Shown here in pieces: positions 1-27,480 of a DNA stretch of 64,000 nucleotides. Position numbers and translations under genes: made by a program. Position 1 is the first letter of the stretch; each line of letters opens with the position of its first letter. The stretch is taken from contig NW_027271522.1 in assembly GCF_040938485.1 (NCBI RefSeq), positions 744,001 through 808,000 of the forward strand, read 5' to 3'. Origin of the DNA: Diadema antillarum. Taxonomy: Eukaryota. A model generated the notes under the pieces. That model saw only the letters and a list, made by a program, of their open reading frames with translations, did not search any database and was not told the origin of the DNA.

Positions 1-33
1 ATTAATGTTGATTATAACATAGTAACGTTTTAA

Positions 34-416: not shown

Positions 417-420
417 TTAA

Positions 421-849: not shown

Positions 850-1354
850 TTAAAAGGGCATTGTACCGGTTTTTTATCTTTTTATATGTTGTTCTTTTAA
901 TTCTAAAAGACCCAGCGGTGAAAATAGAATCAAAATTTCATTACGATTTAGCCCGTAATTTCATATTAAAAATTGAATTTTTTTGGCGAGAATTATGCTA
1001 ATGAGCTGACGAGCCCGGATGTCGTGATGTCACAGGTGCCAAACCTCATGTGTGCTCGCTTGAGAAAATACGGGTGCGTTTTGGGTTTTCCTTCAAGCTG
1101 ACATCATACATGTCAAAGCAGACAGATATATCGATCGATGAAATCGGCGGCTTGATATGTCTACTACACCATGGACCTACATGCTCTGCTGGCGGCGCGG
1201 GTGGCCGCGCCGCATCTGCCAAACCGCAGCCATTTGTGTGGTGCGATCGATAATCGCGCTTGTGATGTAGATTTGTAACGCATGCAACGTTACATAGCGA
1301 TATCACCGCACACACGGTACCTAACTCGTCCATGGTCGTCGGCAATCTACAATC

Positions 1355-4300
1355 ATGCCGTTGTGCCAGGCAGTATTTTGCCGAAATAGACGTAAAGGAT
1401 CCTCACCTAAGTCTTTTTTTGCCATACCGGATCCACTGAAAGAGAGGGAAAGGTGCTCAATATGGCTACGAAACATCGGTAATCCAAAATTTAACATCAA
1501 GTCGTATCAGTATTCAAAATATCGCGTAGTGTGTGAGGACCACTTTGAGCCCACCGCATTTGAAGAAAATCGCACAGCCACTTACCTCGGCTACAAACCC
1601 CCCAAGAAAACCCTCAAATCTGATGCAGTCCCTACCATATTCGAGCACAAACAATATGGAGGCTCGGCACCCCGACCCTCGACTTCCAGAAGGGAGATCA
1701 AGAAGGAGCGTAATGAGGTAGGCCTAGGCCTATGTCTAACTGTTATTAAGGACCAGGAAAAATCCTTTCTTGCAATTGTATGAAAGAAACTTATGGCAAA
1801 CCACTAAAGCCAGAGGCCCTAGTCTAGGCTAGGGCTAGCACGTTGGGGCTGGTTGCAAGGGCTATGCCTATCGTTGCACCGTATCATTTTAGTATCAAAT
1901 AGAACTAGTCTATAGCCTGAATTTTTAGTTTCACGTCAGAAGGTAAGACCTAGCAGTTAGCAGAGACTCCAACCCAAAGCACCTTCTGATCTGGAGATTC
2001 TCCCGCCTGAAACCCCCAGCAAACGGGAGACTCCAAGTCGATGTGTGCGAATCGCCAAGTTCCTAGGGTTCTAAATGCTCTCTGGTGCTATCTAGCTAAG
2101 GCTTGTTTTTTCAACATACAATAGCAATAAGTAAGAAATCCTTTCCAACGGGAGACACAGAGCCAGGGCGGGAGAAATTAAATCTCAAGCGGGAGAACGG
2201 GAGAATTTTGCAAAAATGGGTTTTCGGCGGGAGATCTCCCGTCGAAAACGGGAGAGTTGGAGTCTCTGAGTTAGCCTGTTAAATTTCTAACTGTTACTGG
2301 TACAATGATTCTTAACGTTAGATCTAACAAATCAATTGTTACTAGAACTAGACTCTAGGCCTAACTGCTAGCTAACCGTTAGAACTAAGATTTAATAGAA
2401 TCTACATCTAACAGTTACCTAACAGATCTAGGCCTAGTAGGTCTAGACCTTTCTATAGAACTAGTAGTAACGTTGTGGTGTTGCCGAGACGGCGTAAGGA
2501 AAGCACGTCTGTTCTAACAATTACCCCGGTAACGTCAGGCTACAACTTGTGAAGTTGTTTTTGTTAACGGTTACAAAACTCAAAGACTCTAGAAATATAA
2601 CGCTATTTACCGGTAGATCTAAACGTTAACTTGTTAATGTTACGGCCCTAACTCAGTGTTAGATTCTAACTGAGAGTCTGAGTGTTGAATGTTAGATTCT
2701 AACATGGATGTAAATTTAACAAACAGCTAGACGGTCTAGACTACTATTATTACCGTTAGACAGTCTAATCTAACGCTAACACTCATACAGTTAGCTGTGA
2801 GAATTTTACAACAACGATAAGTCGACTAACGTTCGAAAGCGTCTGATCTAAAAACAGTACACGTAATAGTACCGGTTAACGTTAGCCATTTAGTTACGGT
2901 ATTAGTTAGAATCTAGGCCCTATATAACGTAACAGATCTAACGTTATACTGTGCTAGATTCTCATCGTAGGTAGGCCTAGATCTAAGTAACGCTCAGTTT
3001 AATTCAGGTACAAAATAGGGCCTAGGCCCTAATTAACGTTAGTATTGACATAGGCTCTGTCTAGCTCTAACAAACCTAGATGTTTAACGTTAACTCTAAC
3101 CTGCAGCTCTAACCTAACCGTTACTGTACAATACACTGTAACAATAGGCCTACCATGATAGTGTTAAAATAGACCTAATGTTAACTGTTAGACCCAACTT
3201 CTAACGTGTTAATGTTACCGTTTAGGCATAGATAACGGGTTTGGGTTAGGCCCTCACGTTAACTTAATCGTTGCTGTTACACTCTAAGTGTAACGCCACG
3301 GTTAGAGAACACATGAACTATCATCCCTATAATGACATGTTAACAGTTAGGGCGGTCTAGTTAGACTTCCAGAGTCTCTAACGTTAGAACTAACGTTAAC
3401 CTAGATTCTTTGTAGACTCTATCTACATAGACCCTACTTGCCAACATTTTCATTTGAGAAAGCGGTAGAATCCAGGATGCCTATGCGAGCAGCGCTAGCT
3501 TGAATGCTAAAGAAATCATTCAAAAGCGGTAGTCTACCGCCAAATAAGGTAGAGTTGGCAAGTATGTATCTAAATTCACATTGACAATAAGTTTCTACTA
3601 TCTAGAAGAACCTGTAAAATGTTAAGGAGGTTAGCTGTATTGTGTACGTGAGGCATACGCCGCCTGCTACATGTATTTGTACTGTAGGCCCTGGCCTAGC
3701 GGTTAGCATTATTATTTGTTTATTGTTATTTTCTGTGATAGGCCTACACTGTCGAAACGTGACACAATATGTAATGTTAGGCCTATTCTGTTAAAATGTT
3801 CAGTATCTTTTTATGTCACTAGTTAGAAATGAGCGCTTGGGTTTATTATTATTAGAAGTGGAACTAGAATACGTAGGCTAGATCTATCTATTAACGGTCG
3901 GTAGGATTCCTATACTATAGGCCCTTAATATAAATAGGCCTAACTGTGGTCAGTGTTACTACAATACTAGATATAGATAGGTTCTAGACCATCTACATCT
4001 GGTAGTAGATTTCTATTCAGTAGTAGTACTAGTAGTACATTAGTACGTAAGAGACGTCTAGTGTACTGACTAGTTGTAACAACGGTACCTACAGGTAGGC
4101 CTAGTAGTAACATTTACAATAGTAGTAACGTTAGGCCCTAAGTTAGGTAATGTTAGAATCTAATGTTTGCGGCAGAACCTAGGCCTAATTAGGGCCTACC
4201 GCGAACCATGATATTCGTTTAGTTGATAGGGTGTCACGGCAAGTCCGTAACACCCAAAAATAGCAGTGGTTTAAATTCGCCCATCTTGAGTCTCAAATCT

Positions 4301-7300
4301 AGATTTCTAGGTCTGGAGTCTAACCTTAAACTAAGGTTGTAAGCTAGCACTGTAACAGTTAACAGTAGATCTAGAAACTTTATTCTAACACAGTTAGACA
4401 CTTAGATTCCAGAGTAGGCCTAACGTGTTGGTCGTTACATCTAACAATAATATGTTGTTAGGCCCTAGTTAGCTCGTAAGTAAGGTCTCAACTCTAAATT
4501 TAGTTCTAGTAGTATTTACTAGTAGTAGTAGTAGAACTCTACTACTAGTACTACTAGTAGAAAAAGTAGTAGATCTATCCTGGATCTAATCTAACTGAGA
4601 ACTCTAATGTTAGACCTTATCTAAGATTAGATTCTACTCTTGTTCTGGTCTCTAGAAAAATTTAAAACATCTACGGGTAGATGTTGCTGTTAGAAGACTA
4701 TCTAGACATAGAGAGGTGTAACTCTAATGTTAACATTAACTGTAACAACTGTTATAAGTGGCCCTGTTAATAAAACCTAGGGTCTAACACTAATCACAGT
4801 ACACGTTACATGTTAGGTGTGCAATTTACATGTACCTAACTGCGACCAGCCCGAACGAGAAGCGTTAATATTACTGCATACTGTGTACAAGGTGGGTTTC
4901 TGTCTACCCGATAGTTACGTCAGAATATAGAGCCTGTAACTATGGTTGACAGGATCTAACGTCAGATTTCTAGGCTACTAAGCAGCTAGTTCATATTAGA
5001 TTTGAACTTGATGTACCTATAAGTAAATGTGTGGTCAGACCCTCGGACAATCTAACGGTTACAGCTTTTGAGAAAATGGGATTGAGAATCTGAGGTTTCA
5101 CATCTAATGAAGCTATGAAAAGTAGTACTAACGTGCTACTAGTAACATTGTTAATTGCGATGAAGCCCACTGTTAACAGTGAAATGACTGGTGGAGTAGG
5201 CTAGACAAATTTAACATTTAACTGATGTAACAACATTACTAACAATGTTTTTATGGGTCTAAGACTATCTACACACAAACACACACAAAAAAAGCAAAAA
5301 CAATAAAAAAAAAACCAAATCTGATTGAACTGCTAATAACATTTGCCGGAACATTTATCACAATGATTTAACTGAAGTCAATGAGACAATTTGTTTGCAC
5401 CTGATTCTAAATTAGAGTTTTCGCTGAATTTCGATATTTATTAGTTTTTGTTTTTGTGTTTTTTTGTAAACGATATTTTATGTCGATAATATTACTAACC
5501 GACTCTAAATGTAGCCATGACAACTGTAACAGTTATTTAATTCTACTAAATCTTTTTCTACATTATAAAACTTGATAGGACTCCTGACTGCCAGCTGGAT
5601 GACCCTAGTTTGATCTCCATCCAGTGCTCCATCCTATAGGCCATGATGTTTGTACACTACAACATCCCTCTTGACCTACATGTATAAATGCGCAGACAAT
5701 GTAAATGTAATGATAATGGCAGGACCTTGTACTACAACATGGAGGGTACCCTGGATGTAGAAGACAATTATTAGTATTATACAACGTAATCCTTGCACAT
5801 ACTAAACAAACTAGGAGAATAACTGAAACTTGTGCTGAATGCAGGTTGTGTAACGTCTCAGCATGGTGATGATTTCCTCTCACTTCCCGTATTTCAGCTA
5901 GGACTTCAATTTACCTTTTAGCGTCCATACTGAATGTGACACTTGTTCACAGTAAATAGTAGTTTCCCAATAAGGCTTTTGCAGAAGATTGCATACAGAA
6001 CTACACCTTAGCATAACTGCACCCTGAACTCCAACAGTTATTGTTGTTAGTGGTTATACAGCACAAAGTGGTTAGCCCTACCAATATAGGAGATACAGTT
6101 TGTATAGATGATGAAGAAAAAAAGAAATACCTAGAGTACTATGTGTTGTTTATATAGGCTCTACTAAATATTATAACGAACTTTCAGTAAATCTTGAAAT
6201 CCAAGTACAAAGATTCATCCTTTCCTGAGGGAAATTACATAGTCTAGACTATGACCTACAAATTATACTCTACACAATTTTAAAGTTATGTCTATTTCCT
6301 AACGATGTTCTGTGAAGTAAGTATCATTTAAAATGGGGTATTCTTGTTTTGGATGAAAATAATATTCTTGAATTTAGAATTTGTATATGTCTGGTTTGTG
6401 ATATTAAACTGCTAAAAAGACAATTTTCCTTTAGGCCTATGAATTTTCAATTGCAAACTAAGGAGTTCAAATGAAAACTTCATTCGTCATCTTGTGTACA
6501 TTACCTTTCTGCATATAATTTTGCTGGACCCCAAATTTTCTGATTTTCTCAAATCAGCCTCTTTTGATCCTATTTTTTCTATATTCATCAGATTCTGTCT
6601 AAATGCCATACAAAACCTGTTGCTGCGGATGTGCAAGATCGAAGCTCTAAGGTATGTATCTACTAGATCTGTCGTACTGACCTAGATTAGTGAAACCATT
6701 TAGAAGTCACATAACTTTCTATTTTGGGTATAGTTTTGCATGGATGCAAGCTAATGCGTGAAAATGATATTCTTGAATTTGCAATTGATATACAAGTACG
6801 TCTGGTACTTGCTAACATGCCAATACTCATTAGTGCTTATTCTTGACCACAACCTTGCACCTCATTACTGTGTATCAAACATGTTGTAATTGAGAAACAG
6901 AGATTACGTGGTTACTGCGTGCACACATATGGTTCTGCTGAGACCTTGGCAGTTTTTCTCTCTAAAAAATCATGAAAGTGGCAAGTCAGGCATTATTTAG
7001 TGAAAATATGCTAAAATGTCTTTTTATATTCCTATTTTCTTAATATTGTACTACAAATGTGACATCACAAACTATAGAAGCCTTCATTGTCATCTGGCAA
7101 TGACTGAGCAGAAACTTAAAAAGAAAACCAAAATTTTTCACGTAGGACGGTGATTTATTCATGATGCTGAAAACAAAATGAAAAGCTGAAATTAGAAAAA
7201 AATAATAATCCAAATGGAAATTATGGAAAACCATTATACACAAGAAAGCACATAATATATGGTCAAATACTCTGGAGTCTCTGCATGACTATGTCTTTCC

Positions 7301-10300
7301 CCATCATGGGCCGATTCCATCTATGATGAAGAAACAAAAAAAACAAAACAAACAAAACAGAAAAAAGCCACGAAACCACTTGCTAGCTGGCAGGCAGACG
7401 TCTCTTTCAAAATTTGTTGGTGTAAACAAATGAAAAACAATGATAGTACTTTGGTGTAGATCTAGACAGATACATGTACTTGACAATCAACCACGGCAGC
7501 AAGGCCTGACTTGGGGGGGGGGGGGGGAGGGGGGGGGGGGTGATGATTAGACACCAGTTCATCCTGTAGCTGGAGCCAGTACAATCGTGACAATCTCAAA
7601 GCTAAGGTTTCTTGTACACGGTCTAGTCAATGCTCAGCAAAACTGCGTGTTTACTTCTCAAAATTCGACACTAAAATATGGGCCGTATGCAATGATAAAC
7701 ATGAGTTTCTTTGGTGATTTGTTTTATTTCCATTCATTTTTCCAATGTCATACAAAATAGTTAGATCGATCTAAAAGGAATGTGTTTTTTTTCTATAGAT
7801 CTACATATGAAGAGTTTGTTTGCAGTAACAGATACATCCATAGTTGCCAAATGGAGATATTTGTAATTAAATGTGAGAAAAAATAGAATCATATAAGAAA
7901 ATTTTTGCTTCTTGCGACCTAACTTTAAAAATGTACCTTCATATTTCATGACCAATACAGGGCAAAGTCCATGAAGATGTCCCATCAGATGCTAAAATTC
8001 ATTTTGATTTAATTAAAAGAATATTGTTATCATGTTGTAATTAACGAGTTAATTTTCATATTTTCAACATAGAAAATATTGAATTATGCAAATTTATGAA
8101 CGAAACACTGCCTTAATTTGCATAAATCAAAAACAGTTCTTCGTTTGGAACAAATGAAAAATTATCATCTAAAATGAGCTGAATTGATCTTCACGTAGTT
8201 CCTTTATTGACGAGACCCCTGTATGACTACTTATAAAATAGTATAATATCTATTGGTAAGACAAGATCATCAGCTTCATTATGCAAATTACAGGTGCACT
8301 CCCGATATAACGAACACGGTTATAACGAAATTTTGTTATAACGAAGTAAATCTTCTGGTCCCAAAATTATCACCGTTAAAGTCTATGGTAAGAAATTCGC
8401 TTATATAACGAACACGGTTATAGCGAAATTTCCATTATAAAGAAGTCTTTTCCGAGCGCACAGACAAAGAAAAACAAAAGAAATGTGCTCCGTTATAACG
8501 AAATGCGAATTGCTTTCGAAATTTCGTAGCGGAACAAGCATTTATAGCGTCCTCTGCATGGGTGAACGCTTCACGCCACTGTGTGTTCGCTCTTTGTGTC
8601 ACGCACAGTTTATTATTACGTTTATTATTGTGATACAGCTATTCCATCACATTTCACATAGCTTTCCAGTGTATGATGAGTAATCAGCAAACAGAATATG
8701 ATACAAATGCATGGTTTTCTTGTTTTCGTTATATTGTATTTGTTCGGTTATAACGAAATTTCGTTATAACGAAAGAAAATTGCCTGGTCCCGAGCATTTC
8801 GTTATAACGGGAGTGCACTGTATATGAATTACCCGGAGCGAAGCGTCCAATGCATATGGATTGTGTGTATGTTCTTCAAAAGTTTATTTATGAAGATTTC
8901 TAGCATTGACAAATCTTAATGCATGAAAGAAACCAAACTAAGAAAATAATTGCAAATTGGTGATTCTTTTATTTGTCTTGATTGAAGATTAATTTTCAGG
9001 TACCTTGTTCGGGGAAAGTACCCACTGCAAGTCTATCATTTTCTACATGTTGTAGTACAATCTGTGGAACTGAACATGACACTGTAGAGACATTTAAAAT
9101 CATTCCATAAATACTCTTCTGCATTAAAGACAAATTAGCCTGCATTATCATTTATTTCACATCTGGTTTATCCCCTATTCATCAGATTCTGAGTGCATGT
9201 CATGACAACCCAGATGCTGGGGATGTGCAAGATCGAAGCTCCAAGGTAAGTATCACTATAGATCTGTTGTATTATCTTGGAGCCATGTCATTTACAATTT
9301 CTCATAACTTAATTACCTCCGCCAAGGAAGGAGGTTATGTATTCGTTAACCGTTGGTTTGTGTGTTCGTTTGTTACTTAGTTTGTCCGTGTGCAAAATAC
9401 TCAAAAAGTAGTGAACGGATTGGGATGAAACTTGCAGGAAGAGTTGAGAATGACACAAGTAACAAACGATTAACTCTCGGTTAATGATCCGAGAACTTTG
9501 GGGGAATTTATGAAGGATTTTTGATGTTTTGGCAGTTAGGGGTCAATGAAACTTCGGAGTTCGCCAGGCTGCGCATATTGAGGTTTGCCTGCGCGCACTA
9601 AAGTGCATGCTCTAGTTTATGCTGGGGCGAGGTGCGCCATGCAGCTGAAGGCTTATGACGTAACAAAGGCTTCTATATTTGGAAATCTGGCTACTATTAG
9701 CACCGATGTGGTGTGTACCTATGACATCTCTATGAAGAACAAGATCAGTGAAGTGGTGGAAATAAGCTTCATGCTTGGCGGAGATCTGCGCTCTCAGAGT
9801 GCTTTTCTAGATGCTATCTGCATAATTCCTGCTTTTGTGGGAATGAAAGCTAATGTATGAAAATAATATTTATGAATTTCAATGTTGTATGTGTGGGGTT
9901 TGAAATATCAAGCCTATATTGCTAACATGCCAATCCTTGTTAGTTTGTGTCTCATATGTGTTTTGACCACAACCATGTACTTCATTACTGTTTACTGTAT
10001 GGTGGTGTATTTGAGAAAAAGAGAGTGTGATAAATGCATGCCCGCATACATGTGATTCTGCAGAGACATTGACAGTTTAGCCGTGTACAAAGCTTCTGAA
10101 AGAACAATGAAGTTATCCAGTAATTCTTGTTTTAATGCAAGAACATTGAAAATAGTCAATTTTTAAATATTTTCCTTAGTATCGTTTCATGCATGTGACA
10201 TCACAAGCTGTAGTAGTCTTGATATCCGGTATCAGTCTGAGTAGATACTTCCAAAATTTTAACTATTGCTCATGTCCTATTTTCCTCCATCTTTCAGTGA

Positions 10301-13300
10301 TGTGTTTATACTAATATTGCTGCTTGTATGTATTTATATGAATTAAGGCCGCCTTGTCATTTAACGTCTTGGAATGAATGATAATAATTTCCCAAACAAA
10401 CCAATCCAAGAAATATGGTACAGATTAAAATTCACTTGTTCAACAATAATCACATTACATACAATGCTACGTATAATGTGAACCTCATGTTGAAAGTGCT
10501 ACACACAGTTTGAAGAAAAAAATCAATTGAATTATATGATTGAATTCCATTCATGGTTAAACTTGATTTCAACACATGGTGATTCTTTTACAGTAGGCTA
10601 CAGTGCGCTGTACATCGTCTAGGATTGTATGTGATCTACGTGGTACTCTAGTTGACATTCAGTGCAGATCATAAGATCGGTGGATTTGAATTTACAATAT
10701 ATCATTCAGAAAAAATGCTGATCTTGCCTATGGCTGTCTGTCAATCACTTGATCACAAACCTACATAGGATATAATATTAACAGTCATGTATTCTTTCCT
10801 TATTCCTGTGCCCCAGAAATAGGCAAAGGAAACCAATTAGAAACTTTGAATTTTAAGGATTTAACATTTAATTTTGTACTTCATGCTTACAACTTTTTGA
10901 TATATTTTTCAATGTAAGGATATTAAATATGTCAAAATACATCGTTTATCGTTGAAAAAACAAGGATAAATGTGGAATAAAGTTTTTGAAAATTACACCT
11001 TTTTCATGAATTTTATTCTTATGAATCACCTGCCATCTGTCAAAACATGTAAAAAATTAAATGGCACTTGCAGATTTTTCATTTCACAAAATATGTTTTG
11101 GTATGTACCTGTCTGGGTTTGGACTGAGATTAATTCCAAACTTTATTTGTCCTCGCTGGTGTACATTATCATACTTCATACATTCTTGTAGGACCCAAAA
11201 CTTCCAGATTTTTTCTCACATCCACCTCTTCTGCTCTTATTTTTCTCTATTCAGCATATTCTTTCTGCATGCCATGCAAACCCTGATGCTCAGGATGTGC
11301 AAGATCGAAGCTATAAGGTATGTATTTACCAACTAGCTCTGTCGCCGGCTTAGTTAAGTGTAACCATTTTAAATTTCACAAAATTTTCATCTTTAGGTCT
11401 GGTTTTGCATGGATTCAAGCTAATGTTGGATATGATATTATTGAATTTCATTTGGTAATGGTTTATGTCGTGTTTAGAATATCAATTTGGTAATGATGCC
11501 AATGTTATTTAGTGCCTATACATGTTACGTATATTGCACACAACCAGACACTTCATATACATTATGGTATATCGTTAATGTTTTAAGAAACAGATAGAAA
11601 GTTACTGCCTACATACATGTGGTTATGCAGAGACATTGGCATTTGTTTTTTCCTCTACAAAGCGTGTCATGACAGAGTTGGGGTTATGACAGTATTGATT
11701 ATGTACTGCCTTTTATCAAAAAAACATCTAGTAGCATTCCTTTGTCACAGCCAAAAAGTTTGGGACGAACATCTTCGGACATCTTGACTTTTGAGCGAGT
11801 GCTACATGTAGCTGGCTGGTATTGACCCACAAAGGTACGTGAATAATGCTGTTAGTTTTCGACCCATTTTGTAAAACAAGTGATGCACAGGATTATTTCG
11901 TGGCGTTAGTGAAGGTGCGGCTCACTCTCATGTCGCACCATTGTCAATACTCTCGAGCGCGCCGCACCTTCACTAACACACTCTATCCTGTGCATCATTT
12001 GTATAAAAATCATTATAGACCGTCTATAGGCTTATCCGCACTGTGGCGGCAGCGCAGCGCCTGCAATACGCAACAGTGCGAGAGATCGGAAATTGAAAAA
12101 CGTAGTAGCCGTGGCACCGCCAGAGTTGCCCGTCGCATGTATCCAAGCGCTCGTATGGCCGCTGCAAACCTGAACACTAGCATACACGGGACAGGACGCG
12201 GACGGGTACGCTTGATTGTAAAGAAGGGTGATTGTGACATCATTTTGCAAATAGTATACTATTTGCAAAATGTCGTCATAAAAGTGACGTCATTTTGCAA
12301 ATAGTACTTCATGGAGTGTCAAACACACCAACACTCTAAAATAGTTCAAAATACCTCTAATCACGTGAAGCTCTTTTAACCAATCAATGAAAGACAAATT
12401 TTTGATCCAAAATATAATAGAAAATATTTTCTTCATTTACATAACATGCAGAAAAGGTGCTGTACAGCAGGAGCCGTAGCGGATGTAGGTATTCAAACAG
12501 ATGTATCTTCCATCGTGGGCACAGCTGAATCCAGTTCACAAACAACAACTACTGTCTTCGAATATGGGACACAGATGCCAGTTGCGGAACTGTCACCAGG
12601 AGCATTGGTCATTCAGGATCATCAATACAGCAATCCAAGCAAGGAGTGCACACAGTCACAAAGCCTTCAATCGTGCAGCCAACCCAAATCTCTACAGTGT
12701 TCCAATGATGAAGTCCAGACTTCAGTGCTTGTTACCCCGGTAGATACTCCGCTGCTGACACATTTGCCTGCACCACCGCTTAGTAATCAAGATGACTCCG
12801 TTAACCAACTGGTAGGATTTTATAAAGTTGACTATTGATATATATATTTACTGAAATGATATTGTAGTCAAGGAATCGCAAACAGCAATACCAAAAGTAT
12901 TTTCCATAAATATTTTTAGTTTTGGGTAATTTGAAAGTCTCACAAATAATACAAACAGTCATCATCCATGGTCTGTTGTGTGTATAATCCTTGCAGCATT
13001 TCAATTTTTTTTTTCATCTGTCACTCCATAAATTTTTGTCTTGTGTGTGTCTTCATACCAATGCAAGTCAATTTGTAACTTTCAATTTATCATATGAGTA
13101 AAAAAATTAAATCGCTAACTGAAAATCCTAATTTGTTCACATTAGCAGATCCATTGTGGGTTGTGAGGAGAGTTCAAAATGGCAGTTGGTGAACCATCTA
13201 TTTTTTTTTCCCCAAGTGCCTTATTGAAAGCACATGGTCAATTTTGACACCATAACACTTGCATTATCACAAGATTGACAGTACTTTAAAATTACAATGA

Positions 13301-15315
13301 CCCCAGAATGTATTTTTGGAACTGTAAAAAGTCTTGATATAAGGTTACCAAATGCATTTTCAGTGTTCATTACATTAGATTCAGAAGTTGAACCAAGATT
13401 GGGGGGGGGGGGGGTGATTTACATTATTTCCTTTTTTTTGGTACTCTTAAGTCAATTTGTAAGTATAGTGAAGATTGCAATCTTTAAGGAGATTGGAATC
13501 TTAAAAAAAAAATGCAATTTATTCAGGTAGTACTACGTAGTCTAGAAAAATGTGTGAAGATGAACCTGTGATCTTCAGGTGAGCAAGAGAACTCGAATTT
13601 TTTTTTTTTTTTTTGGGGGGGGGGGTTAACTTTGTTAGATGCTGTTTCTTTGTTCTAGTGCAAATCTTTGTTTTTATACTGCTAATTCTCTCCATCTTAA
13701 TCATTGTTTTTCTTCTTATTATTTTCTTAATCATTGTCTACAGGATCCTCCAAGTGCAGATTCAGAGGCAGACCTTCACGAAGATCCCCCATATGAGCCG
13801 GGCACTGATTCTGTATCACCTGACAGTGAAGAAACAACAGGAGAAGAACAATATGTTTCTTCCAAGAAATATCTGGTGTTTGAGGAAAATCTGTTGTCAT
13901 TGGTGTTTAAGTTATCATGCCCTACTTGCAAGGGAGCTGTGGGAGAAGTCAAACAGATTCCGCAAGGATCAATGCTGAGAGTCCAGGCATTCTGCACAAA
14001 TGGACACTATGTTGTGAGTTGGGATTCACAGCCACAAATACAAAGAACTGCTGTGGGTAATCTTCTCTTAGCTGCAGCCACATTGTTCACTGGGCTGACG
14101 CACAAAAGAGTGGAAGACTTCATGAGTTGTGCAGGCATTGAATACATCAGTGAGTCAAGCTTCTACAAGTATCAACGAACTTTGCTCTTGCCTGTAATTA
14201 ATGCAGAATATGAAGCTTCAATAAAGGCTGCTGTAGAGAATAGCCAGAAAGGTGTCGGTGATGGATCTAAACTTGTTGTTTGTGGAGATGGCAGGTGTGA
14301 CTCACCAGGTCACAACGCTAAATTCTGTACGTATTCGATGATGAACTCGTCAACTCATCAGATTATAGCCACATCTCTGGTGCAAGTTACACAAGCATCT
14401 AGTTCCAATGCTATGGAAAAGGAGGGGTTCTTGAGGTGCATGAAAGAACTTGCCAGTAAAAGCGTCAATGTTAACATCATGACTACAGATAGACACATGG
14501 GCATACGCGCTGTTATCAGGAAGGACTTTCCAGATGTAACACATCAGTTTGATGTATGGCACTTGTCTAAGAGTGTTAGGAAGAAGCTCTTTGAAAAGAG
14601 CAGACACAGAGGATGTGAAGCACTGAGTGGTTGGATACAAGCAATATCAAATCATTTGTGGTGGTGTGCATGCAATTGTCAACAAAACCCTGACAGACTA
14701 GTGGAAATGTGGACATCGATTACACACCACGTCACAGATTCCCATGAGTGGTGCCATGGTGATCACTTCAGGAAATGTGCCCACGAACAACTTACCCCAG
14801 AAGAGAGAGCTTCAGTGGAGTGGCTCGAGTCAGGATCTCCTGCTCATGAAGCTCTAAATGACGTGATTTTCAATCGCACCATTTTGAAGGACATCCGCCA
14901 AATCACCATGGCATTGAACACGGGGGGGCTAGAGCAATACCATGGCCTTATGCTCAGATATTGCCCCAAACGCCAGGCATTTGACTACCCTTGCATGCTG
15001 GGTAGAACACAAATGGCAGTCATCGACCATAATTACAACAGTGACAGGAAACATCTGAGGGACAGTGAGGGGAGAAAGAAGTACTCAGCAGTGTACCAAA
15101 AAGCGACAAAAAGATGGGTACTGAGGGCAAGGTATGCCAAGAAGGACTTTTCCTATCTAAGAGGAATGATGACAAATGTCTTTGGTCTGAAATTTGGCAA
15201 CATTGAGCTGGGTGATCCAGAAATCCCCAATCTTCCACACAACATAGCACCAGTTCCCTGCCCACCAATGGAGGAAATGATTGCAACACGTAGGACTCGC
15301 TTTCAAGAACTGTAA
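1355..15315 (+). CDS. THAP domain + Kolobok-type DDE transposase, about 825 aa, spliced
   Basis: Predicted exons 1355-1717, 6592-6651, 9186-9245, 11255-11317, 12452-12811, 13744-15315; all GT-AG, all phase 0. Exon 1 is a THAP C2CH domain (C-x4-C..W..CEDHF..AVPTIF). The last exon has CPTC..CTNGH, GDGRCDSPGH (D, 14287), TTDRH (D, 14488), FDVWH and TGGLEQYHG (E, 14932). No stops in the model. Inclusion of the mini-exons is inferred. Confidence 0.88.
1718..5300. repeat. Low-complexity intron region rich in short palindromes (CTAG, TCTAGA, AGATCT, GTTAAC, AACGTT, TAGGCCTA) and TAG runs
   Basis: Dense occurrence of these words throughout the first intron of the transposase gene; TAG/CTA runs near 4020 and 4510-4570. 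Confidence 0.7.
1961..2268. mobile_element. 308-bp MITE with 13-bp TIR and 6-bp target duplication (hAT-like)
   Basis: CAGAGACTCCAAC...GTTGGAGTCTCTG, with AGTTAG immediately on both sides (1955-1960, 2269-2274). Internal GGGAGA motifs repeat. Confidence 0.8.
8291..8820. mobile_element. Tc1/mariner-type MITE (TA target)
   Basis: TA|CAGGTGCACTCCCGATATAACGAA ... TTCGTTATAACGGGAGTGCACTG|TA, with many internal TATAACGAA motifs. Confidence 0.85.
9311..9811 (+). mobile_element. Non-autonomous Helentron-type element (HINE/DINE-like)
   Basis: 5' TACCTCCGCCAAG and 3' CTTGGCGGAG subterminal inverted repeat. A 3' hairpin GCGCTCTCAGAGTGC is followed by TTTTCTAG. Microsatellite-like GTTT stretch near the 5' end. 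Confidence 0.75.
12225..12425. repeat. Dispersed repeat, unclassified; inverted copy at about 56625-56825
   Basis: Shared GTGACATCATTTTGCAAATAGT..TACTATTTGCAAAA..CACGTGAAGCTCTTTTAACCAATC, present as the reverse complement near 56660-56820. Confidence 0.7.
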
Positions 15316-15369
15316 TTGTTAATTGAAGTGAAGTAAACATAAACTCTTGAGTTGCTTTAGTCGACATCA

Positions 15370-16260
15370 CCTGTTCATGAAGCATTGAATGCTGTTGTCT
15401 TTAACAAGACTCTGCTCAAGGATATTCGTCAGATCACTGTGTCATTGCACGCAAGAGGACTTGAGTATTATTATGGCCTCGTGCTCTCCCCTTTGCCCTC
15501 ATTTTATCATGACAGTTATACCCATGATGACACTACCCAAGAATGGAGAGGTCCAGTTGAATGGCTTGGGTTGAGATCCCCTGCTCATGAAGTTTTGAAT
15601 GCTGCAGTCCTTAACAAGACTCGCTGCTCAAGATCATTTGTCAGATCACTATGTCATTGCATAAAAGAGGACTGGAGTATTATGGCCTCATACTCAGATT
15701 TTTCCCTCATAACAACATGAAAGATAAACCCATGATGACGCTACCCAAGAATGGCGAGGTTCAATTCAGAATGGTACGAGTCAAGATCCCCTGGTCATGA
15801 AGCTTTGAATCGAGACCGCCTGCTCATGAAGCTTTGAATGCTGTTGTCTTTAACAAGACTCGCTGCTCAATAGTCGTCAGATTACTATGTCTTTGCACAC
15901 AAGAGAACTGGATCATCATCATGGCCTCATGCTGAGATTTTGCCCTGAACGGCAGGAAAGATATACCCATGAAGACTTTACCTAAGAATGGAGAGGTTAA
16001 GTTGAACGGCTTGGGTCGAGAACCCCTTCTCATGAAACTTTGAATGCTGTTGTCTTTACTTGCTGCTCAATGACATTCGTCAGATTAATATGTCATTGCA
16101 CACAAAAGGACTGGATTATTATCATGGCCTCTTGCTGAGATTTTGCCCTCAAAACAGCAGGAAAGATATACGTACCCATGAATACTTTGCCCAGAAATGG
16201 AGAGGTTAAGTTGAATGGCCTGAGTCGAGATTCCCTGCTCATGAAGCTTTTAATGCTGAT
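15370..16260 (+). repeat. Tandem array of about 208-bp units derived from transposase CDS 14790-14995
   Basis: Unit anchor CCTGYTCATGAAG at about 15370, 15580, 15790 (with a short extra duplication at 15820), 16026 and 16235. Units translate to degenerate VEWLG..SPAHEALNAVVFNKTLLKDIRQIT..GLEYY.G, matching VEWLESGSPAHEALNDVIFNRTILKDIRQITMALNTGGLEQYHG. Confidence 0.9.
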
Positions 16261-18792
16261 ATCTTCTGGAGGCACTGGACATAAGAGAGTACGTGACGCA
16301 ACTACAGGAAGGATAGAAGTGTTTGTCATCGTGATACTAACTTTATTTTGGTGACCTAGTTCTAATCAATGATGGGAATTAACATACCGCATAGTTCATG
16401 GTTGCTCGGGAAATAACAAACAGACTATAATGCCTGATGACAGACATTACATCAATATCGCTGAAAGGAAGACAATGAACAGCATTATCTTTTGTGAAAT
16501 CTTGGAAGGAGATGACTTCATGGAGCTCATATGGCATCAGTGAATTAATGGAGCAGTGAAATTTTATGAAAGCTGATACACAGCATTTTTTTAAAAGTGT
16601 CATATGTGTTGAAGCATTTGTGATTGTCAAGTGGAAATCAATGGTCGCAGGAGGGAGATATTGTGTGATGCTGTTACTTCAACTACAATTCCAGCATAAA
16701 GATAAATGCATCCTACAACAATACGTTGTGGTGGTGAGTTTGTGCTATAATGGCAGCATAAAGACAATCGCATGTGTGGAAGTATGAAATGAAGGTCAAA
16801 GTATGATATCGTGTTGCACAAGCATGACGTAAAGGTCAAGTTGTGATGTACTTTATGAAAATGTCGTTTGGAGCATAATTTGTGATATAATAGCAGTATA
16901 AAATGACATCAGTTGAGTCCTTGGATGAAAAACTCAGCATTCAGCCTTTCTCAGAGGTGATTTTATCATCAAAACGGTTATATTTGCTGTGATATCGCTG
17001 AAGGCTTGTGTGTTTAACCTCATCGCGGAGGAGATCATTTGCGACAAGTGAATATTTCCTAGTCACCGGAATTTATTTGTTGCATCTTTTCAGACCAGTA
17101 GAATTCAAAGCAAAGTGAAAGATTACTTGTGGAAGCGTTGAATAAATCACAAATACTGGGTTCTTAAGAATTCAGTAAGGTATCACATTTAAGGGGTCCA
17201 AGATGTAAGATAAGTATGTTGGGAAGTTGCGGACTTAGACTCCTCTTGTGATTCAACATGTAGAGGTTGTTTTGCATTTCTCTGCCAGCAGTCAATTGTC
17301 ATTGAAGAGGACTTGTTGTCATGAATCCAGCTGGATTCAATTCCACAGTTTTTGATAAGACTAATGTCATTGAAACTTATCACTTTGCAACCTGCTAGTT
17401 TGCATGTTGGTGGATAGTAAGTGTGAATTCATTGACAACAAACCGTATTCTTGTCATGTTGACATGGTCAAAAAATTGCAGTAGAGTTGAGCTTTTATAT
17501 CAGCATGCTACCAGCTGCAGTGGCTTTTGCTCACATTGTGACATATAATACACTAACATGACATTTTATTCCAGAGGGAGTTATTACGAATTGTATGTTT
17601 ATATTCTAGATGTGGCTTCAGCTTTGCATATTATTGCATATGTACCGGCCTAAATATCACCAGAGGCTTACATTTTCAGGTTTTCTGTCTGTCCTTATGC
17701 CTGTAAATGTGTTTTGGTCAGCGTTAGAAAGTTGATGGTGGAATCGAGGCAACTAAACTATGCTTATAGTTCTTGCTTGGCAATTTTACTTGGTAACTTT
17801 ACACCAGAACTATAATTTCGACGGGGACATGTGTGGTGACTTGTAGGTTATGTTGTGATGCCAGATCGATCACAAATAGTAATAGCTTTCAGTGAATTAG
17901 TGTAAGGAAATAGTGGAATTGTGCTGCCATCACTGAATTTTATCTTAATTCAATGTGAGATTGACACATATTGTCACTATAGACTTGAAAATATGTCAAT
18001 GCCAACAAACAAGGTGATTTGGTACATTTAACCAGACATGTTTTAAGCCATTACCCCAATTCAGATAACCCTATCCGTTATATCGTTGAATGCGGACAAA
18101 CATACATGTGATTTTTTCAGATTCTCATGAAAAACAAAAAGCAAAACGAGTAAAAAACCTATAAAATGTATCATTTGATCGGGTATATACTAACAAAGAT
18201 GCAAAATAAAAAATTTGTAATTTCGATCATCATTTGCAAATGCAAGGTGGTGAATAAGGAGAAAATTATTACTTTGTGAAGTGAAGCTTGCAACACATAC
18301 AGACTTTAAGGGTCCAAAATATAGGGAAGATAGGACATGTGCTTTCCAAGATTCATGATGAAACATGACTTTGGGAGTAATTTGCACAGCCAATATGATG
18401 TCTAGTGAAGTTGGCCTAATTATCTTACTATGAAGTAATATATGTGACATGGATTGAACTTGTGAAAATTATAAGAGATATAGTAAGGTCTTTATATATC
18501 AAGGTAATACAGACAAAGTTGTAGAAAGAAAAAAAAATATCCTGACGTCGAAGTTATGTTTCAATTTTAACCCAGTATGTTGATGTCATCCTGGCATCTA
18601 ATGAGAAAAATGGAGGGCACACCTCTGATAATGCAAAGTATCGGCTGCAACGAATTGAATCCTTGGAGAAATTCACATAATAATGTTGAGTGACCTAGTG
18701 TTCGACGGAGACTGTTGTGTCAATTTGCATTTAAAGAAACAAATGGATTGTCATAGAGATAATATGTACAAAGATTGAATCTTTAATGCTAT

Positions 18793-19260
18793 TTACAGTT
18801 CATTTTTACAAGGTATTAATGTCATCCAGTTTAAAATTTGAGGTTGCATACATACCAAAGGCAATTCAACAAGCTGTAGCACAATGAATTCTTGGTGAAA
18901 ATTTGTCCAGGATAAGTGTATATACAGTATAAAGGACAAGGTATTGACATGATACCTGCATATTTCCTTTAAAATGTTATGGATTGAATTCCAAATTTTT
19001 GAATCATTTGAAATCAAACTTGATGGAGAGCATGACAGTGAGGTATAGATGTGATAGATACTTATCTTGTGTTTGCCAGAAAAAACATTACCATGATCAA
19101 CCACAGTTTTACCAAAACCTTGTCGTAGGAAATTACTTCCACAGTATTAGTATTTAAACACTTTATTTCAAATTTGGTATGTACTGTTGTATGATACATG
19201 ATGTTTAATCTTAGATGTCGTTACGTTGAGACACTGTTTCCGCTTGTACCAAACAGGGCA
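18793..19260 (-). pseudogene. Possible decayed Mab-21 / cGAS-like receptor (cGLR) fragment
   Basis: Minus ORF 18793-19104 contains ILKEICRYHVNTLSF..W-x18-C..L..LIPCKNEL, resembling the Mab-21 C-terminal pattern SYH(V/L)KT..F..W-x18-C..L..YFIP..NL. An upstream frame gives PWP..VWYKR. No NTase GS/DxD motif was found. Match made by eye only. Confidence 0.35.
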
Positions 19261-20189: not shown

Positions 20190-20221
<32 letters not shown>

Positions 20222-21460: not shown

Positions 21461-21524
21461 TGAATGAATGAATTCTAAAAAGTAGTGAACACGAATGAAC
21501 AGATTGACATAAAAAAGAATAACA

Positions 21525-21712
21525 GTGGACTGTTGTTATAACAAATTTATCGGGCCTGCAGATTTCTTTCTTTGTATCAAAATTTGTTCACATCCTAACA
21601 AATAAGCAATAAAAAATACAAACCAGGCAAGGTTGTGGCCGGATATTTTAACTCATTGCAGCTGAAATTTTGTTATACAACAACAGTGTTCGATATAACG
21701 TGAGTGCACTCT
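21525..21712. mobile_element. Degenerate relative of the 8291-8820 Tc1-type MITE
   Basis: GTTGTTATAAC.. at the left end and TTCGATATAACGTGAGTGCACTC at the right end. Confidence 0.5.
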
Positions 21713-21855
21713 ATCACAACAGCAGTTCCAGAAGATATTAGTCTTGTATGTAGCATGAAAATAAATAGCAAGATTTAACTTCATAACAGTCTTTTTACAT
21801 CTCACTACAGTGTACTAGTATATGTTTAGTGAACACAGTAGGCCTCATTATCAAA

Positions 21856-22453
21856 CTATATATTTAATGCCTCATCGATCTCGGAAGATCCTTGAAAGCC
21901 AGTGTAGATGTTGTCCTCTGCGGGAAAGACTGCCCGTATTTTAGAAACCGCACAAGCCGGGATCACTCTTCGCTTTCCCTTTCCCAGGTATCCATGCGTC
22001 CATGCAGTGAAGGCCTGGTATGATGTAAATCTGTACCTCCTGTAATTAAAACAAGAACAAGAAGCAAACATGGAAAAACTTTGGTGAGCTACAGGTACTA
22101 TGTCACAATCATATTTGCGACATTAATATGAGACACAATCGAGTATATGACACCATTTACAATACACTGATATTAACTTTGCAAACATTCCTTTAAATAA
22201 AGTGTTGAGGAGACTATGACATTAATGTATATATGTATACAATATTAGTATATATATATATATATATATATATATGCATATATTAATGGAATACAAAGTT
22301 TTCTCCATTTCTGTCCTTTCAAAAATGCCTACTCTTCCTAGGCACAATGAATTTGATTGCAAACATGCATATGCAGTTCAATTCACTTATGTAAATACCG
22401 GTACTGTCCAAATGACAGTTTCGTTAGAAACATAAAAAGTGAAGATAACAAGA

Positions 22454-22494
<41 letters not shown>

Positions 22495-25400: not shown

Positions 25401-26536
25401 CAGTACTGTAACAATACGCTACAGCCCCTGTATTAAACGTTAGATTAAATAATTTCAAGTAACTGTTAGGCCTAACGTTACTTTTGTAAATGTTAATCGA
25501 AATCAGACATAAGGAAACATTAAATAGCAAGATAAACGTTAGTACTCAATATAGCCCTTTACTTAGGAATGAATGGCATAGGCCTACTTCCGCATAGCAT
25601 GGTCAAATGTAGTGTACACGTGTGAATATAACATTAGTACAATGTAACGTTTATTAACCAAAGAACATTGCATCAACATACATACAGTACATACACGCAA
25701 GACTGACGTGCCGGGCCGCGCCAGCATCCAGGAAGCTCGATATATCGTTAGTGCGATACTAGTATGGGATCGGATCATGACGTGTATCGGCACACGTGTA
25801 GCTAAAGTTAGCTACCTAATAAAAAATGATAGCACATGCGAAGAACACGCCCACAAGCAAAAGCTGGCAAATTCGCTTACAAGGAGATCGCTAACTTCAG
25901 TTTCGGAATACGCGCTTGTATGCCTTGCTTCAAAGCGACTTTTTTTGAGCGATAATATCCAAATAGTCGCAGGTATATCAACAGTTCCCGAAATCGGATG
26001 CATATCAAATTTTCATGATCGATGGGATACAAGATGTTAAGTATTTCGTTTGATTTTGATGAAAATTGGTAATACGGAATTTGAGAAATCAACTTTGTTA
26101 AATAGGATCTTAAGCGCAAGTCTTGGCTGGGAGTTAAATTTTACTTGTTCGACATAGCACCGGCTCCACTTATTCCCTGAACATGCCGTCGCATCACGTT
26201 GGCGACTTCCAGCACAGCAGTACTGAGGCAAACCTTCTCGAAGTCTCTATGTCGTGTTATGCATTTAACTGAGGAGAAGTCCGTAATGTTTGCAAAATGT
26301 ACTTCTTTACAACAGATATTTTCTCTCTCACTCGGCATTGCAAAGCAGTGCGAGCAACTGCACCACACATCCACAGCCTGCGTTAAACGGGACGGTGGAG
26401 CTTTTGAGTTGCGAACGAACAGGTCGGGACCAGCAACGGCCTGGTTACAGGGAAAGTCACGGATATCCTTATCGCGGTCGTTCTTCCTGTGCCAGATTTG
26501 CCGTCGGGTTGGCTGAAAATCATAAGGAAGGGCCAT
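21856..26536 (-). CDS. KolX / P2X7 C-terminal ballast-like Cys-rich protein, 191 aa, two exons
   Basis: Exons 26536-26145 (392 bp) and 22039-21856 (184 bp), phase-2 GT-AG intron, joined in frame. Motifs PYDFQP, WCSCSHC, ENICCKE, CITRHRDF, RYRFTSY..W.HGYLGKGKRRVIPAC.V.KIR..FP..YTGF. Confidence 0.9.
22700..25600. repeat. Palindrome-rich (CTAG/TCTAGA/AACGTT/TAGGCCTA) low-complexity intron of KolX
   Basis: Same word bias as 1718-5300, inside the single KolX intron. Confidence 0.65.
24890..25350. mobile_element. Fragmented copy of the 34-416 TTAA MITE family
   Basis: AAAGTTTATTTGATGAAATTCGG..GCCGAGATATCCAAAA and GCCATTTGAAAATCAGTTTTCAT match the internal arms of the 34-416 element. Confidence 0.55.
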
Positions 26537-27116
26537 TTGTATCTCGTCTAGTCGCCATAAAAAGTAAAATTTCTGGAGCTAGCCACACGTACACCTCGCG
26601 AGTTCGGTACATCACAGTGAACAGCTGTTCGCCTGTGTTGAGCCGCTCGATGCTGCCAGCGTTGATTCCTCTTACTGCATGCTCTACGAGAGCACGTACG
26701 GCTAACCATGCCAATTTAGTTTTACATATTTTCAGAAAATTGATTGTTTTCAGATCAAAGTAATTAATATTTGATATGATATGCTTCACATATCAATATG
26801 AATAGTTTCCGTAATTATTGTAAACTCATAAAATGCATATACGTATGACAATTTTATTTTGATACTGCATCATCAGTGCATGAATGTTTACTTCAGTAAA
26901 TTGACTTGTGTAGTATTTCTTGCGGAAAGCACAGTTGGCACCTGTGACGTATGCCAAATTGTGTGGATCGTTCCTGGGAATGCTCGTTTTCATTTTTTTC
27001 AAAAATCCATTACAGGCTTATCCTGGGTTTTAGAATCCTCTCTTTCCAGTTGTAGGCATCAAAAAAATGTAGATTAGAATTATCAGACAAGTAGAAAATG
27101 TCAGTACAGGTTTCTT

Positions 27117-27480
27117 TTAAAAGAAAACGAATTGTTTGAACTGTCTTTCGAATCACTTCTCAACCACCCAGATGACGCCGGCAGTATGTTGAAACTTATC
27201 GATGCCTCGAGATACTTTTTTTTTCAGTAAAATATGACACTGCATAATATGATGAAGGCCCTCTTATGTTTTTGCAAAATACAACTTGATTCTTCAACAA
27301 AATATCATCATCCAAAAATATTCCACAATTGGGAAGTATATTTTTCTAATATTTTAGATAAAGTAGGCAATAACGACTTCGAAAAACAAGAAGTTCTGAT
27401 TCTGTTTATAACACTGTTAATGGAACATAATATCTAACAATGTCACAATTTTATTCATAGAAATATCATAACCTACATTT
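27117..27480 (-). mobile_element. Decayed CR1/L2-like LINE RT fragment (N-terminal part, continuous with 421-849)
   Basis: Minus strand SLLPTLSKILEK at about 27341-27376 and WLRS at about 27155-27167. Confidence 0.75.

What the first reader, a model, noticed from the sequence alone, without database searches (positions are those of the whole stretch)
854..27116. 26-kb, intron-rich, coding-intact Kolobok transposon with convergent THAP-transposase and P2X7-ballast (KolX) genes
Seen: TTAA on both sides; a spliced + strand THAP/DDE gene and a spliced - strand Cys-rich gene pointing at each other; no stops in either model; introns up to about 4.9 kb with several nested MITEs. Known: Kolobok elements use TTAA targets and pair a transposase with a KolX accessory protein, and autonomous cut-and-paste elements are usually only a few kb. 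Inferred: this is an unusually large, gene-like Kolobok lineage that behaves as a two-gene mobile island with room for cargo, or one on the way to domestication.
Basis: partly seen in the sequence, partly recalled or inferred. Interest (0 to 1): 0.85.

Follow-up and report, generated by a model that had tools for sequence, protein, structure and literature searches.

The report
Giant two-gene Kolobok transposon, sea urchin
This is a 26-kb jumping gene of a known family (Kolobok, Kol0 type) with both of its genes apparently intact; it is ordinary in kind, but it is about twice as long as any Kolobok described in the papers read here, and read depth suggests, without proving, that several near-identical copies exist.

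Summary
Window 854-27116 (26,263 bp) lies between two TTAA tetramers. Its ends start AAG and share motifs in the same order and register, including a 14-bp inverted repeat about 170 bp inside each end.

On the + strand there is a THAP/DDE transposase gene with no internal stop: 764 aa in a 3-exon model, 825 aa in a 6-exon model. On the - strand, pointing towards it, is a 2-exon, 191-aa gene for KolX, the family's second protein, which carries a P2X7-ballast domain. All modelled splice sites are GT-AG. Every residue invariant in 21 homologues is kept.

This two-gene layout defines the published Kol0 lineage of Kolobok (Kojima & Bao 2022). I found the same convergent layout in four other animal loci, from a compact 4.1-kb element to a sea-cucumber locus of at least 14.5 kb that shares the KolX intron at the same codon and phase.

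Only the size is new. Nested MITEs (short non-coding transposon copies) explain under 10% of it, and no cargo gene was found. DNA contigs show the left end belongs to a repeat family starting exactly at the TTAA. Depth suggests roughly 3-10 near-identical copies, but this is indirect.

No RNA data were obtained. Mobility versus early domestication stays open. The scan has unchecked notes of other Kolobok/KolX relics elsewhere in this genome.

The parts
850..853 (.). left TTAA (target-site duplication)
   Evidence: Sequence. Contigs of the repeat family that match the left end begin at 850, that is, with the TTAA (records 4 and 19).
854..1045 (+). left terminal region: AAG terminus, imperfect terminal inverted repeat (TIR), and the 14-bp subterminal motif at 1029-1042
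   Evidence: The depth here is 2,000-34,000, against roughly 100-175 in the unique interior. Family copies are about 92% identical, and one contig has unlike sequence to the left of 850.
1355..1717 (+). transposase exon 1: THAP zinc finger (C4, C9, C60, H63, AVPTIF box), 121 aa, donor GAG|GTAGGC
   Evidence: Pfam THAP 3e-16. tblastn with THAP-bearing homologues. Sequence.
6592..6651 (+). candidate 20-aa mini-exon, copy 1 of a triplicated unit
   Evidence: Alignment of the three copies, with AG/GT sites and an in-frame reading kept. Use in mRNA not shown.
9186..9245 (+). candidate 20-aa mini-exon, copy 2
11255..11317 (+). candidate 21-aa mini-exon, copy 3
12452..12811 (+). transposase linker exon, 120 aa, with the DxGxQ linker motif and a DHQY motif that resembles an HCF-1-binding site
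   Evidence: Canonical AG/GT sites, phase 0 on both sides. The motif is shared with the linkers of P0059, P0035 and P0023.
13744..15315 (+). transposase core exon: zinc finger plus DDE domain, 523 aa and the stop codon
   Evidence: Pfam Mutator-like 8.6e-12. 510 homologues, best 49% identity. All invariant residues kept, including D182, D249, DxxH 270-273 and E397.
15347..16265 (+). about four decayed tandem copies (about 210-225 bp each) of the segment that encodes the catalytic-Glu region, lying just after the stop codon
   Evidence: blastn self-matches; tblastn secondary hits.
21856..22039 (-). KolX exon 2 (60 aa plus stop), the C-terminal end of the ballast domain
   Evidence: Pfam P2RX7_C 3e-9, profile positions 143-192. 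Collinear with P2X7 residues 544-592, E 0.024.
26145..26536 (-). KolX exon 1 (130 codons plus 2 nt) with the Cys cluster WCxCxxC...CC...C
   Evidence: Pfam P2RX7_C 1e-5, profile positions 66-127. The motifs match the KolX alignment in Fig. S6 of PMC9587614.
26935..27116 (-). right terminal region: the 14-bp motif at 26935-26948 and the AAG terminus
   Evidence: Not examined with reads.
27117..27120 (.). right TTAA
   Evidence: Sequence.
1961..2268 (.). nested high-copy MITE in intron 1 (TIR CAGAGACTCC...)
   Evidence: Depth about 100,000-370,000 and loose ends at 1961 and 2268. Sequence.
8294..8818 (.). nested MITE-like element with 21-33-nt inverted ends
   Evidence: I1, I11, I25.
9310..9783 (.). 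nested repeat with a second copy at 49063-49996 of the window

Best explanation
This is a full-length, autonomous-looking DNA transposon of the Kol0 lineage of the Kolobok superfamily in a sea-urchin genome. It is 26,263 bp long and inserted at a TTAA.

It carries the lineage's two genes tail to tail. One is a THAP-zinc-finger/DDE transposase. The other is KolX, a small cysteine-rich protein with the fold of the P2X7 'ballast' domain.

Shown: the ends, the two intact reading frames with canonical splice sites, the retained catalytic and zinc-binding residues, and the family relationship.

Inferred mechanism:
- The THAP finger recognises the terminal or subterminal motifs; the 14-bp inverted repeat about 170 bp inside each end is the best candidate.
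- The DDE domain cuts the element out and pastes it into a new TTAA.
- KolX assists in an unknown way.

The extra length is about 20 kb of element-specific introns and a 6.5-kb spacer, enlarged partly by internal duplications and only slightly by nested MITEs.

Contig depth suggests a few near-identical copies, all with the long form, which would mean recent movement. That step is indirect.
For: Ends: TTAA on both sides, AAG termini, motifs in the same order and register, and a 14-mer present only at the two ends in inverted orientation.

Reads at the left end: contigs of a repeat family start exactly at the left TTAA, and one has unrelated sequence outside it.

Genes: Pfam THAP, Mutator-like DDE and P2RX7_C; models of 764/825 aa and 191 aa without stops; all residues invariant in 21 homologues are kept.

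Family: KolX plus transposase defines Kol0 (PMC9587614). The same convergent layout occurs in L001-L004, including a young compact element of 4,120 bp with 201-nt TIRs (99% complementary) and TTAA|AGGG termini. The KolX intron sits at the same codon and phase in a holothurian. The transposase falls in a clade with the two named echinoderm sequences.

Copy number:
- In run X2 the flank/junction contig has depth 19.5 against 77-105 for the interior.
- In run X5 the flank bin has 16 against 133-178 inside.
- The small run X8 covers about 35% of the unique interior, although its contigs total at most about 4.8% of the contig letters of the full DNA run X2, taken as a proxy for genome size.
- Exon 1 and intron 1 have the same depth.

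No annotated sea-urchin protein is more than 49% identical, which argues against an old conserved host gene.
Against: No second copy was seen directly.

The reads tool itself warns that summed contig depth is not a copy number and that dips in depth prove nothing.

Each run shows one sequence variant in the interior, which is also what a single locus would give. Organisms A and B differ by only about 0.1-0.3% there.

The TIRs match at only 9 of 16 terminal bases, although putatively active Xenopus Kolobok copies match at 10-11 of 16 (PMC6004289).

The right end was not examined with reads.

There is no RNA evidence. The only contigs over the exon-1 donor cross it unspliced and look like DNA.

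Use of the mini-exons rests on sequence alone.
Confidence: 0.6

Rival explanations
1. A single-copy, immobilised Kolobok insertion whose two genes are being kept by the host (early domestication). The long introns, CpG-rich promoters and the HCF-1-like motif would then reflect life as ordinary host genes.
For: The structure is gene-like, with 2-6 exons and CpG-rich 5' regions. Each DNA run shows one sequence variant. The element is present almost unchanged in two organism labels. The terminal branch in the tree is long. Domestication of Kolobok transposases on a large scale is documented in Xenopus (PMC6004289).
Against: Both ends and the TTAA are still recognisable. Interior depth is 4-10 times the flank depth, and the interior is over-represented in small runs. 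No ortholog above 49% identity appears among annotated proteins, including sea-urchin and sea-cucumber ones. All catalytic residues are retained, but that fits either reading.
Confidence: 0.25
2. The unit is mis-delimited. The sequences at 854 and 27116 would be ends of unrelated small elements, and the two genes would be the remains of a shorter or differently bounded Kolobok element, or of two elements.
For: The left 190 bp belongs to a family with far more copies than the interior, so it could be a separate MITE fragment. Overall identity between the two ends is low.
Against: The distances from each end to the gene starts (501 and 580 bp) are of the same order as in the compact relative (322 and about 275 bp). 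The two ends share motifs in register and a unique 14-mer. There is exactly one THAP exon, one core and one KolX between them. No TTAA or matching inverted end closes a MITE near 1045.
Confidence: 0.08
3. A dead relic. The open frames and splice sites would be leftovers, and the gene models would not be expressed.
For: There is no RNA evidence. Decayed tandem copies of a coding segment sit after the stop codon.
Against: 825 codons and 191 codons without a stop, seven canonical intron pairs, all in phase, and every invariant residue kept. That is not expected after long neutral decay.
Confidence: 0.07

Closest known systems
Kol0 lineage of Kolobok (type element Kolobok-1_XT; Kapitonov & Jurka 2007; Kojima & Bao 2022, PMC9587614)
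   Same: TTAA target, 5'-RR termini, a DDD/E transposase with a DxxH motif and a zinc finger, plus a second protein, KolX, with the P2X7 ballast-type Cys cluster.
   Different: This element is 26.3 kb, with 1-5 kb introns in both genes and a 6.5-kb spacer. In that paper's list, Kol0 hosts are vertebrates, annelids, cnidarians and sponges; this element is from an echinoderm. Placement against the Repbase sequences themselves was not tested.
Full-length Xenopus tropicalis XKol elements (Hikosaka et al. 2018, PMC6004289)
   Same: TTAA flanks, AG/RR termini, imperfect 16-nt TIRs (10-11 of 16 matching there, 9 of 16 here), and a transposase of about 765 aa.
   Different: They are 6.8-13.9 kb with a contiguous transposase coding sequence of about 2.3 kb. 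Here the coding sequence is split over 14 kb and the element is about twice the longest of them.
Compact Kol0 element found here in L004 (9055-13174 of that locus, assembly GCA_949826985.1)
   Same: The same order: THAP, transposase core, convergent KolX. TTAA flanks and an AGGG-type terminus.
   Different: It is 4,120 bp, has 201-nt TIRs (99% complementary), and has no KolX intron at the position seen here.
Holothuria leucospilota locus L001 (annotated 'Transposase' HOLleu_02272 plus a 191-aa P2RX7_C gene)
   Same: A convergent pair, a multi-exon transposase with mini-exons in the linker, and a KolX of the same length with the intron in the same codon and phase. It falls in the same tree clade.
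   Different: Protein identity is only 34-46%. The two genes span 14.5 kb (transposase start to KolX start). I could find neither its ends nor its THAP exon.
P element / THAP9
   Same: A THAP DNA-binding domain at the N-terminus of a transposase whose gene has introns. This is a functional analogy for splicing-dependent control.
   Different: A different catalytic family and a different target duplication (8 bp), with no KolX partner. This comparison rests on general knowledge and was not tested here.
P2X7 receptor C-terminal ballast and zebrafish Nanor
   Same: KolX shares the domain (Pfam P2RX7_C on both exons).
   Different: There is no P2X channel part. Here the domain is a free-standing 191-aa protein inside a transposon.

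Membership tests
Kolobok superfamily | TTAA target-site duplication | tested here: met
   TTAA at 850-853 and at 27117-27120. Family contigs start with the TTAA.
Kolobok superfamily | 5'-RR ... YY-3' termini | tested here: met
   Both ends read AAG on their own strand.
Kolobok superfamily | DDD/E transposase with a C/DxxH motif and a zinc finger before the last catalytic E | tested here: met
   D182, D249, D270-x-x-H273, Cys/His at 312-347 and E397 are all invariant in 22 aligned sequences. Pfam PF20700 match. 510 homologues.
Kolobok superfamily | terminal inverted repeats | tested here: inconclusive
   Only 9 of 16 terminal bases match, but shared motifs lie in register and there is a unique 14-bp subterminal inverted repeat. 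This is similar to the published Xenopus copies.
Kolobok superfamily | several copies, or other evidence of transposition | tested here: inconclusive
   Depth ratios and over-representation in small runs suggest about 3-10 copies. No second locus was seen.
Kol0 lineage | a second gene encoding KolX with the ballast-type Cys cluster | tested here: met
   P2RX7_C on both exons. The motifs WCxCxxC, CC, CIT and YRxxxYxxFTxW are as in Fig. S6 of PMC9587614. Weak collinear match to P2X7 residues 544-592.
Kol0 lineage | grouping with Kolobok-1_XT in a transposase phylogeny | not tested
The tree holds only database relatives.
Domesticated Kolobok-derived host genes | loss of ends and TSD, single copy, orthologs under selection across species | tested here: inconclusive
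   The ends are present. There is no ortholog above 49% identity. Copy number is unresolved.
P2X7 receptor genes | ballast domain fused to a P2X channel | tested here: not met
   The 191-aa product holds only the ballast-type region. No P2X domain appeared in any ORF scanned.

The most novel reading that the evidence does not exclude
A currently or very recently active 26-kb Kolobok whose copies all keep about 20 kb of their own introns and spacer. This would be by far the largest working member of the superfamily and a natural TTAA cut-and-paste system that tolerates a very long payload. Its long, conserved-position introns might give it splicing-based control, as in the P element.
Probability: 0.3. 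Interest if true: 0.65.

Novelty: new member of a known kind. Interest (0 to 1): 0.45.

Why it matters
The kind of element is already described: the pairing of a Kolobok transposase with KolX, and the link of KolX to the P2X7 ballast, were published in 2022.

What this locus adds:
- An apparently intact example from an echinoderm.
- A size about twice the largest Kolobok copies in the papers read here.
- Evidence that an intron-bearing form of both genes is old in echinoderms, because the KolX intron is shared with a sea cucumber.

If the depth signal of several near-identical copies is confirmed, this would be a working transposase/KolX pair that moves 26 kb. That would be a useful system for asking what KolX does and how much DNA a TTAA cut-and-paste enzyme can carry.

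Tried and rejected
- Homologue search with KolX exon 1 found nothing (word index too coarse). phmmer of exon 1 against solved structures gave no P2X7 match.
- tblastn with the linker regions of P0059 and P0035 found no support for, or alternative to, the mini-exons.
- Cargo: ten other ORFs, including the supposed cGAS-like one at 18793-19104, gave no significant Pfam hit. No Rfam family matched.
- The ends and the THAP exon of the holothurian locus could not be found.
- Two contigs carrying the closest homologues had no DNA available. One look-up was not on record.
- The scan's own notes, searched by sequence, were blank. Searched by word, they list other Kolobok and KolX relics in this genome but no second copy of this element.
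- RNA evidence: the one run search, made with kind 'any', returned DNA-like runs only. The two small runs laid on the window cross the exon-1 donor unspliced.
- 'Nested insertions explain the size' was rejected. In 854-6000 only about 10% is high-copy repeat, and across the whole element the recognisable nested MITEs total about 1.5-2 kb.
Full report
**What is there**

The window is AT-rich (about 38% G+C). A follow-up note of this scan says it comes from a sea urchin; I did not check that.

TTAA sits at 850-853 and again at 27117-27120. The sequence between, 854-27116, is 26,263 bp.

Read outward-in, both ends begin AAG. They share short blocks in the same order: the terminal AAG, TGTAC at bases 9-13, AGCCnGTAAT near base 100, the 14-mer GTCACAGGTGCCAA, then TGTGCT and AAATAC.
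- The 14-mer occurs only twice in 64 kb, at 1029-1042 (+) and 26935-26948 (-), 175 and 168 nt from the ends. None is expected by chance.
- The pattern TTAARRG-N5-TGTAC also occurs only at the two ends, in inverted orientation. This pattern was chosen after seeing the ends.
- Shared 7-mers in register number 12, against 1.2 in shuffles; most of them come from the 14-mer.
- Only 9 of the first 16 bases match. That is close to the 10-11 of 16 seen in Xenopus Kolobok copies regarded as potentially active (PMC6004289).

**The genes**

Transposase, + strand. ORF 1355-1783 holds a complete THAP finger (Pfam 3e-16). ORF 13639-15315 holds a Mutator-like DDE domain (8.6e-12). Homologues that carry a THAP domain align to both pieces and to nothing else in the window.
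- Canonical sites define exon 1 (1355-1717, donor GAG|GTAGGC), a linker exon (12452-12811) and the core exon (13744-15315). All are in phase 0. Together they give 764 aa, close to the 782-802 aa of THAP-bearing relatives.
- The linker exon carries the DxGxQ motif that relatives have at the same place, and a DHQY motif.
- A unit of about 500 bp in intron 1 is triplicated. Each copy holds a 60-63-nt open segment with an AG acceptor and a GTATGT or GTAAGT donor, and this segment is more conserved than its surroundings. Including all three gives 825 aa, still with no stop and with introns of 4,874, 2,534, 2,009, 1,134 and 932 nt.
- Whether the three mini-exons are used is not shown.
- In an alignment with 21 homologues, every invariant residue is present in the window's protein. 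These include D182, D249, the DxxH motif at 270-273, E397 and the Cys/His positions of two zinc fingers.

KolX, - strand. ORFs 26536-26141 and 22071-21856 match successive parts of Pfam P2RX7_C: profile positions 66-127 at 1e-5, and 143-192 at 3e-9.
- A GT donor after 26145 and an AG acceptor before 22039 join them in phase 2. The product is 191 aa and the intron is 4,105 nt.
- Exon 2 aligns collinearly with residues 544-592 of P2X7 (E 0.024).
- The Cys pattern and the YRxxxYxxFTxW motif match the published KolX alignment.

Layout. The two genes point at each other across a 6.5-kb spacer. The spacer begins with about four decayed tandem copies of the transposase segment around the catalytic Glu. 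Both gene starts lie in CpG-rich stretches about 500-580 bp inside the ends.

**What it belongs to**

Kojima & Bao (2022, PMC9587614) state two things. The originally described Kolobok families, the Kol0 group typified by Kolobok-1_XT, encode a DDD/E transposase plus KolX. KolX has the P2X7 cytoplasmic ballast fold, with seven conserved cysteines. Kolobok elements target TTAA and end in 5'-RR. The window meets each of these features.

I found the same convergent arrangement in four other loci:
- A compact element of 4,120 bp with 201-nt TIRs (99% complementary) and TTAA|AGGGAT termini (L004).
- An intronless pair (L002).
- A hemichordate locus with short introns (L003).
- A Holothuria leucospilota locus (L001). 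Its transposase gene is annotated with at least seven exons over 6 kb, and a 191-aa P2RX7_C gene lies convergent to it. The two genes together span 14.5 kb.

The holothurian KolX intron splits the codon just before (R/H)YRF in phase 2, exactly as here. KolX is uninterrupted at that point in L002 and L004.

In a quick maximum-likelihood tree the window's transposase falls in a well-supported 11-member clade with both named echinoderm sequences (S. purpuratus, Holothuria). It sits on a long branch, with its best identity at 49%.

So there seems to be an old echinoderm sub-lineage of Kol0 whose genes carry introns. The window holds a much enlarged member of it.

**Why it is so long**

Recognisable nested repeats total about 1.5-2 kb: 1961-2268, 8294-8818, 9310-9783, 12233-12417 and a fragment near 25000. 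Internal duplications add perhaps 2-3 kb.

In the 6 kb laid with reads, only about 10% has repeat-level depth. The rest of intron 1 has the same depth as exon 1.

Ten further ORFs have no significant Pfam domain and there is no Rfam match. So I see no cargo gene. The supposed cGAS-like relic at 18793-19104 gets no support.

**Is it mobile?**

I had one run search and one read-laying run. I laid window 1-6000 with two full DNA runs (X2 of organism A, X5 of organism B) and two small runs (X6, X8).

(a) The left end. Region 850 to about 1045 has depth 2,000-34,000, from contigs about 92% identical to the window. Two listed contigs start exactly at 850, and one has 266 unlike letters outside that point. 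So the left end is a true repeat-family boundary at a TTAA. The family appears to share only the terminal 190 bp or so, up to the 14-bp motif. That is what non-autonomous relatives would look like.

(b) Depth in the full runs. The unique interior is covered by long contigs, up to 3.8 kb with 0-2 differences. Their depth is 77-105 in X2 and 133-178 in X5. The contig that carries the flank and runs 22 nt into the element has depth 19.5 in X2. The flank bin has depth 16 in X5.

(c) The small runs. X8's contigs total about 41 Mb, at most about 4.8% of the contig letters of X2 (about 850 Mb), which I take as a proxy for genome size. Yet they cover about 35% of the unique interior here and 33% of the transposase exon. 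X1, X6 and X7 show similar excesses. With Poisson sampling this points to at least 3-4 times the ordinary coverage.

(d) Cross-check. The X6/X5 depth ratio (about 0.01-0.03), combined with the fraction of the genome that X6 assembles (about 11%), implies a single-copy depth in X5 of at most about 18-55. That is well below the 133-178 seen inside the element.

Together these points favour roughly 3-10 near-identical copies, all carrying the long intron. There are caveats:
- The tool warns that summed contig depth is not a copy number and that dips in depth prove nothing.
- Contigs drop minor variants.
- Each run shows a single variant.
- Organisms A and B differ by only about 0.1-0.3% in intron 1, plus one non-synonymous change at 1644.

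A single locus is therefore not excluded. I put multi-copy at about two in three.

The absence of any protein above 49% identity among annotated proteins argues against an old domesticated gene, but not against a very recent one.

**What was not obtained**

No RNA run was obtained. X6 and X8 contigs run unspliced across the exon-1 donor and look like DNA. All splice junctions therefore rest on sequence and on comparison with relatives. The right end was not examined with reads.

**Verdict**

The classification as a KolX-bearing Kolobok is right and already known as a kind.

The unusual points are:
- the 26-kb size;
- the long introns made of the element's own sequence;
- the intron shared with a sea cucumber;
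- possibly, several near-identical copies.

The 'room for cargo' idea has no support. Mobility versus early domestication needs a whole-genome copy count and transcript data.

Noticed in passing
window 30-420 (also 28023-28390 and 39898-40213): A MITE of about 390 bp with TTAA|AGGGATGGTAC termini. These resemble the AGGG-type Kolobok terminus of the compact relative in L004 and, loosely, the left end studied here. Summed contig depth is about 1-3 million in the full DNA runs, so this is an extremely abundant family.
   Followed up: partly
window 15347-16265: About four decayed tandem repeats (period about 210-225 bp) copied from the transposase segment around the catalytic Glu (about 14777-14860), placed right after the stop codon.
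   Followed up: partly
window 6475-6955, 9175-10093, 11138-11663: A triplicated intronic unit. Each copy holds a 60-63-nt in-frame exon-like segment with intact splice sites. The last 20 nt or so of the segment are identical in all three copies, while the flanks have diverged.
   Followed up: partly
window 12232-12306 and 12233-12417 (copy at 56631-56815): Nested palindromes that contain TGACGTCA (a cAMP-response-element-like octamer), inside a 185-bp repeat that recurs elsewhere in the window. It lies just upstream of the transposase linker exon.
   Followed up: no
window 28446-28892 and 29219-29747 versus 51568-52006 and 52602-53135: SRCR-domain exons (Pfam 1e-28) duplicated at 79-86% identity about 23 kb apart. 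The transposon lies next to, or within, a tandemly duplicated scavenger-receptor gene.
   Followed up: no
window 50446-51334: An inverted self-match of about 890 bp at 87% identity (a large palindrome).
   Followed up: no
window 1644: In organism B's DNA run the THAP exon reads C instead of A (Glu97 to Ala, next to the AVPTIF box). This is the only coding difference seen between the two organism labels in exon 1.
   Followed up: no
L004 9055-13174: A compact 4,120-bp Kol0 element with 201-nt TIRs (99% complementary), TTAA flanks, a THAP ORF, a 673-aa transposase ORF and a convergent KolX. It looks very young and would make a good reference for the family.
   Followed up: partly
run X10 (organism C): A third organism label holds 12% of the sampled 31-letter words of the transposase exon. 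That suggests a related copy at roughly 93-95% identity, or a partial one, in another species.
   Followed up: no
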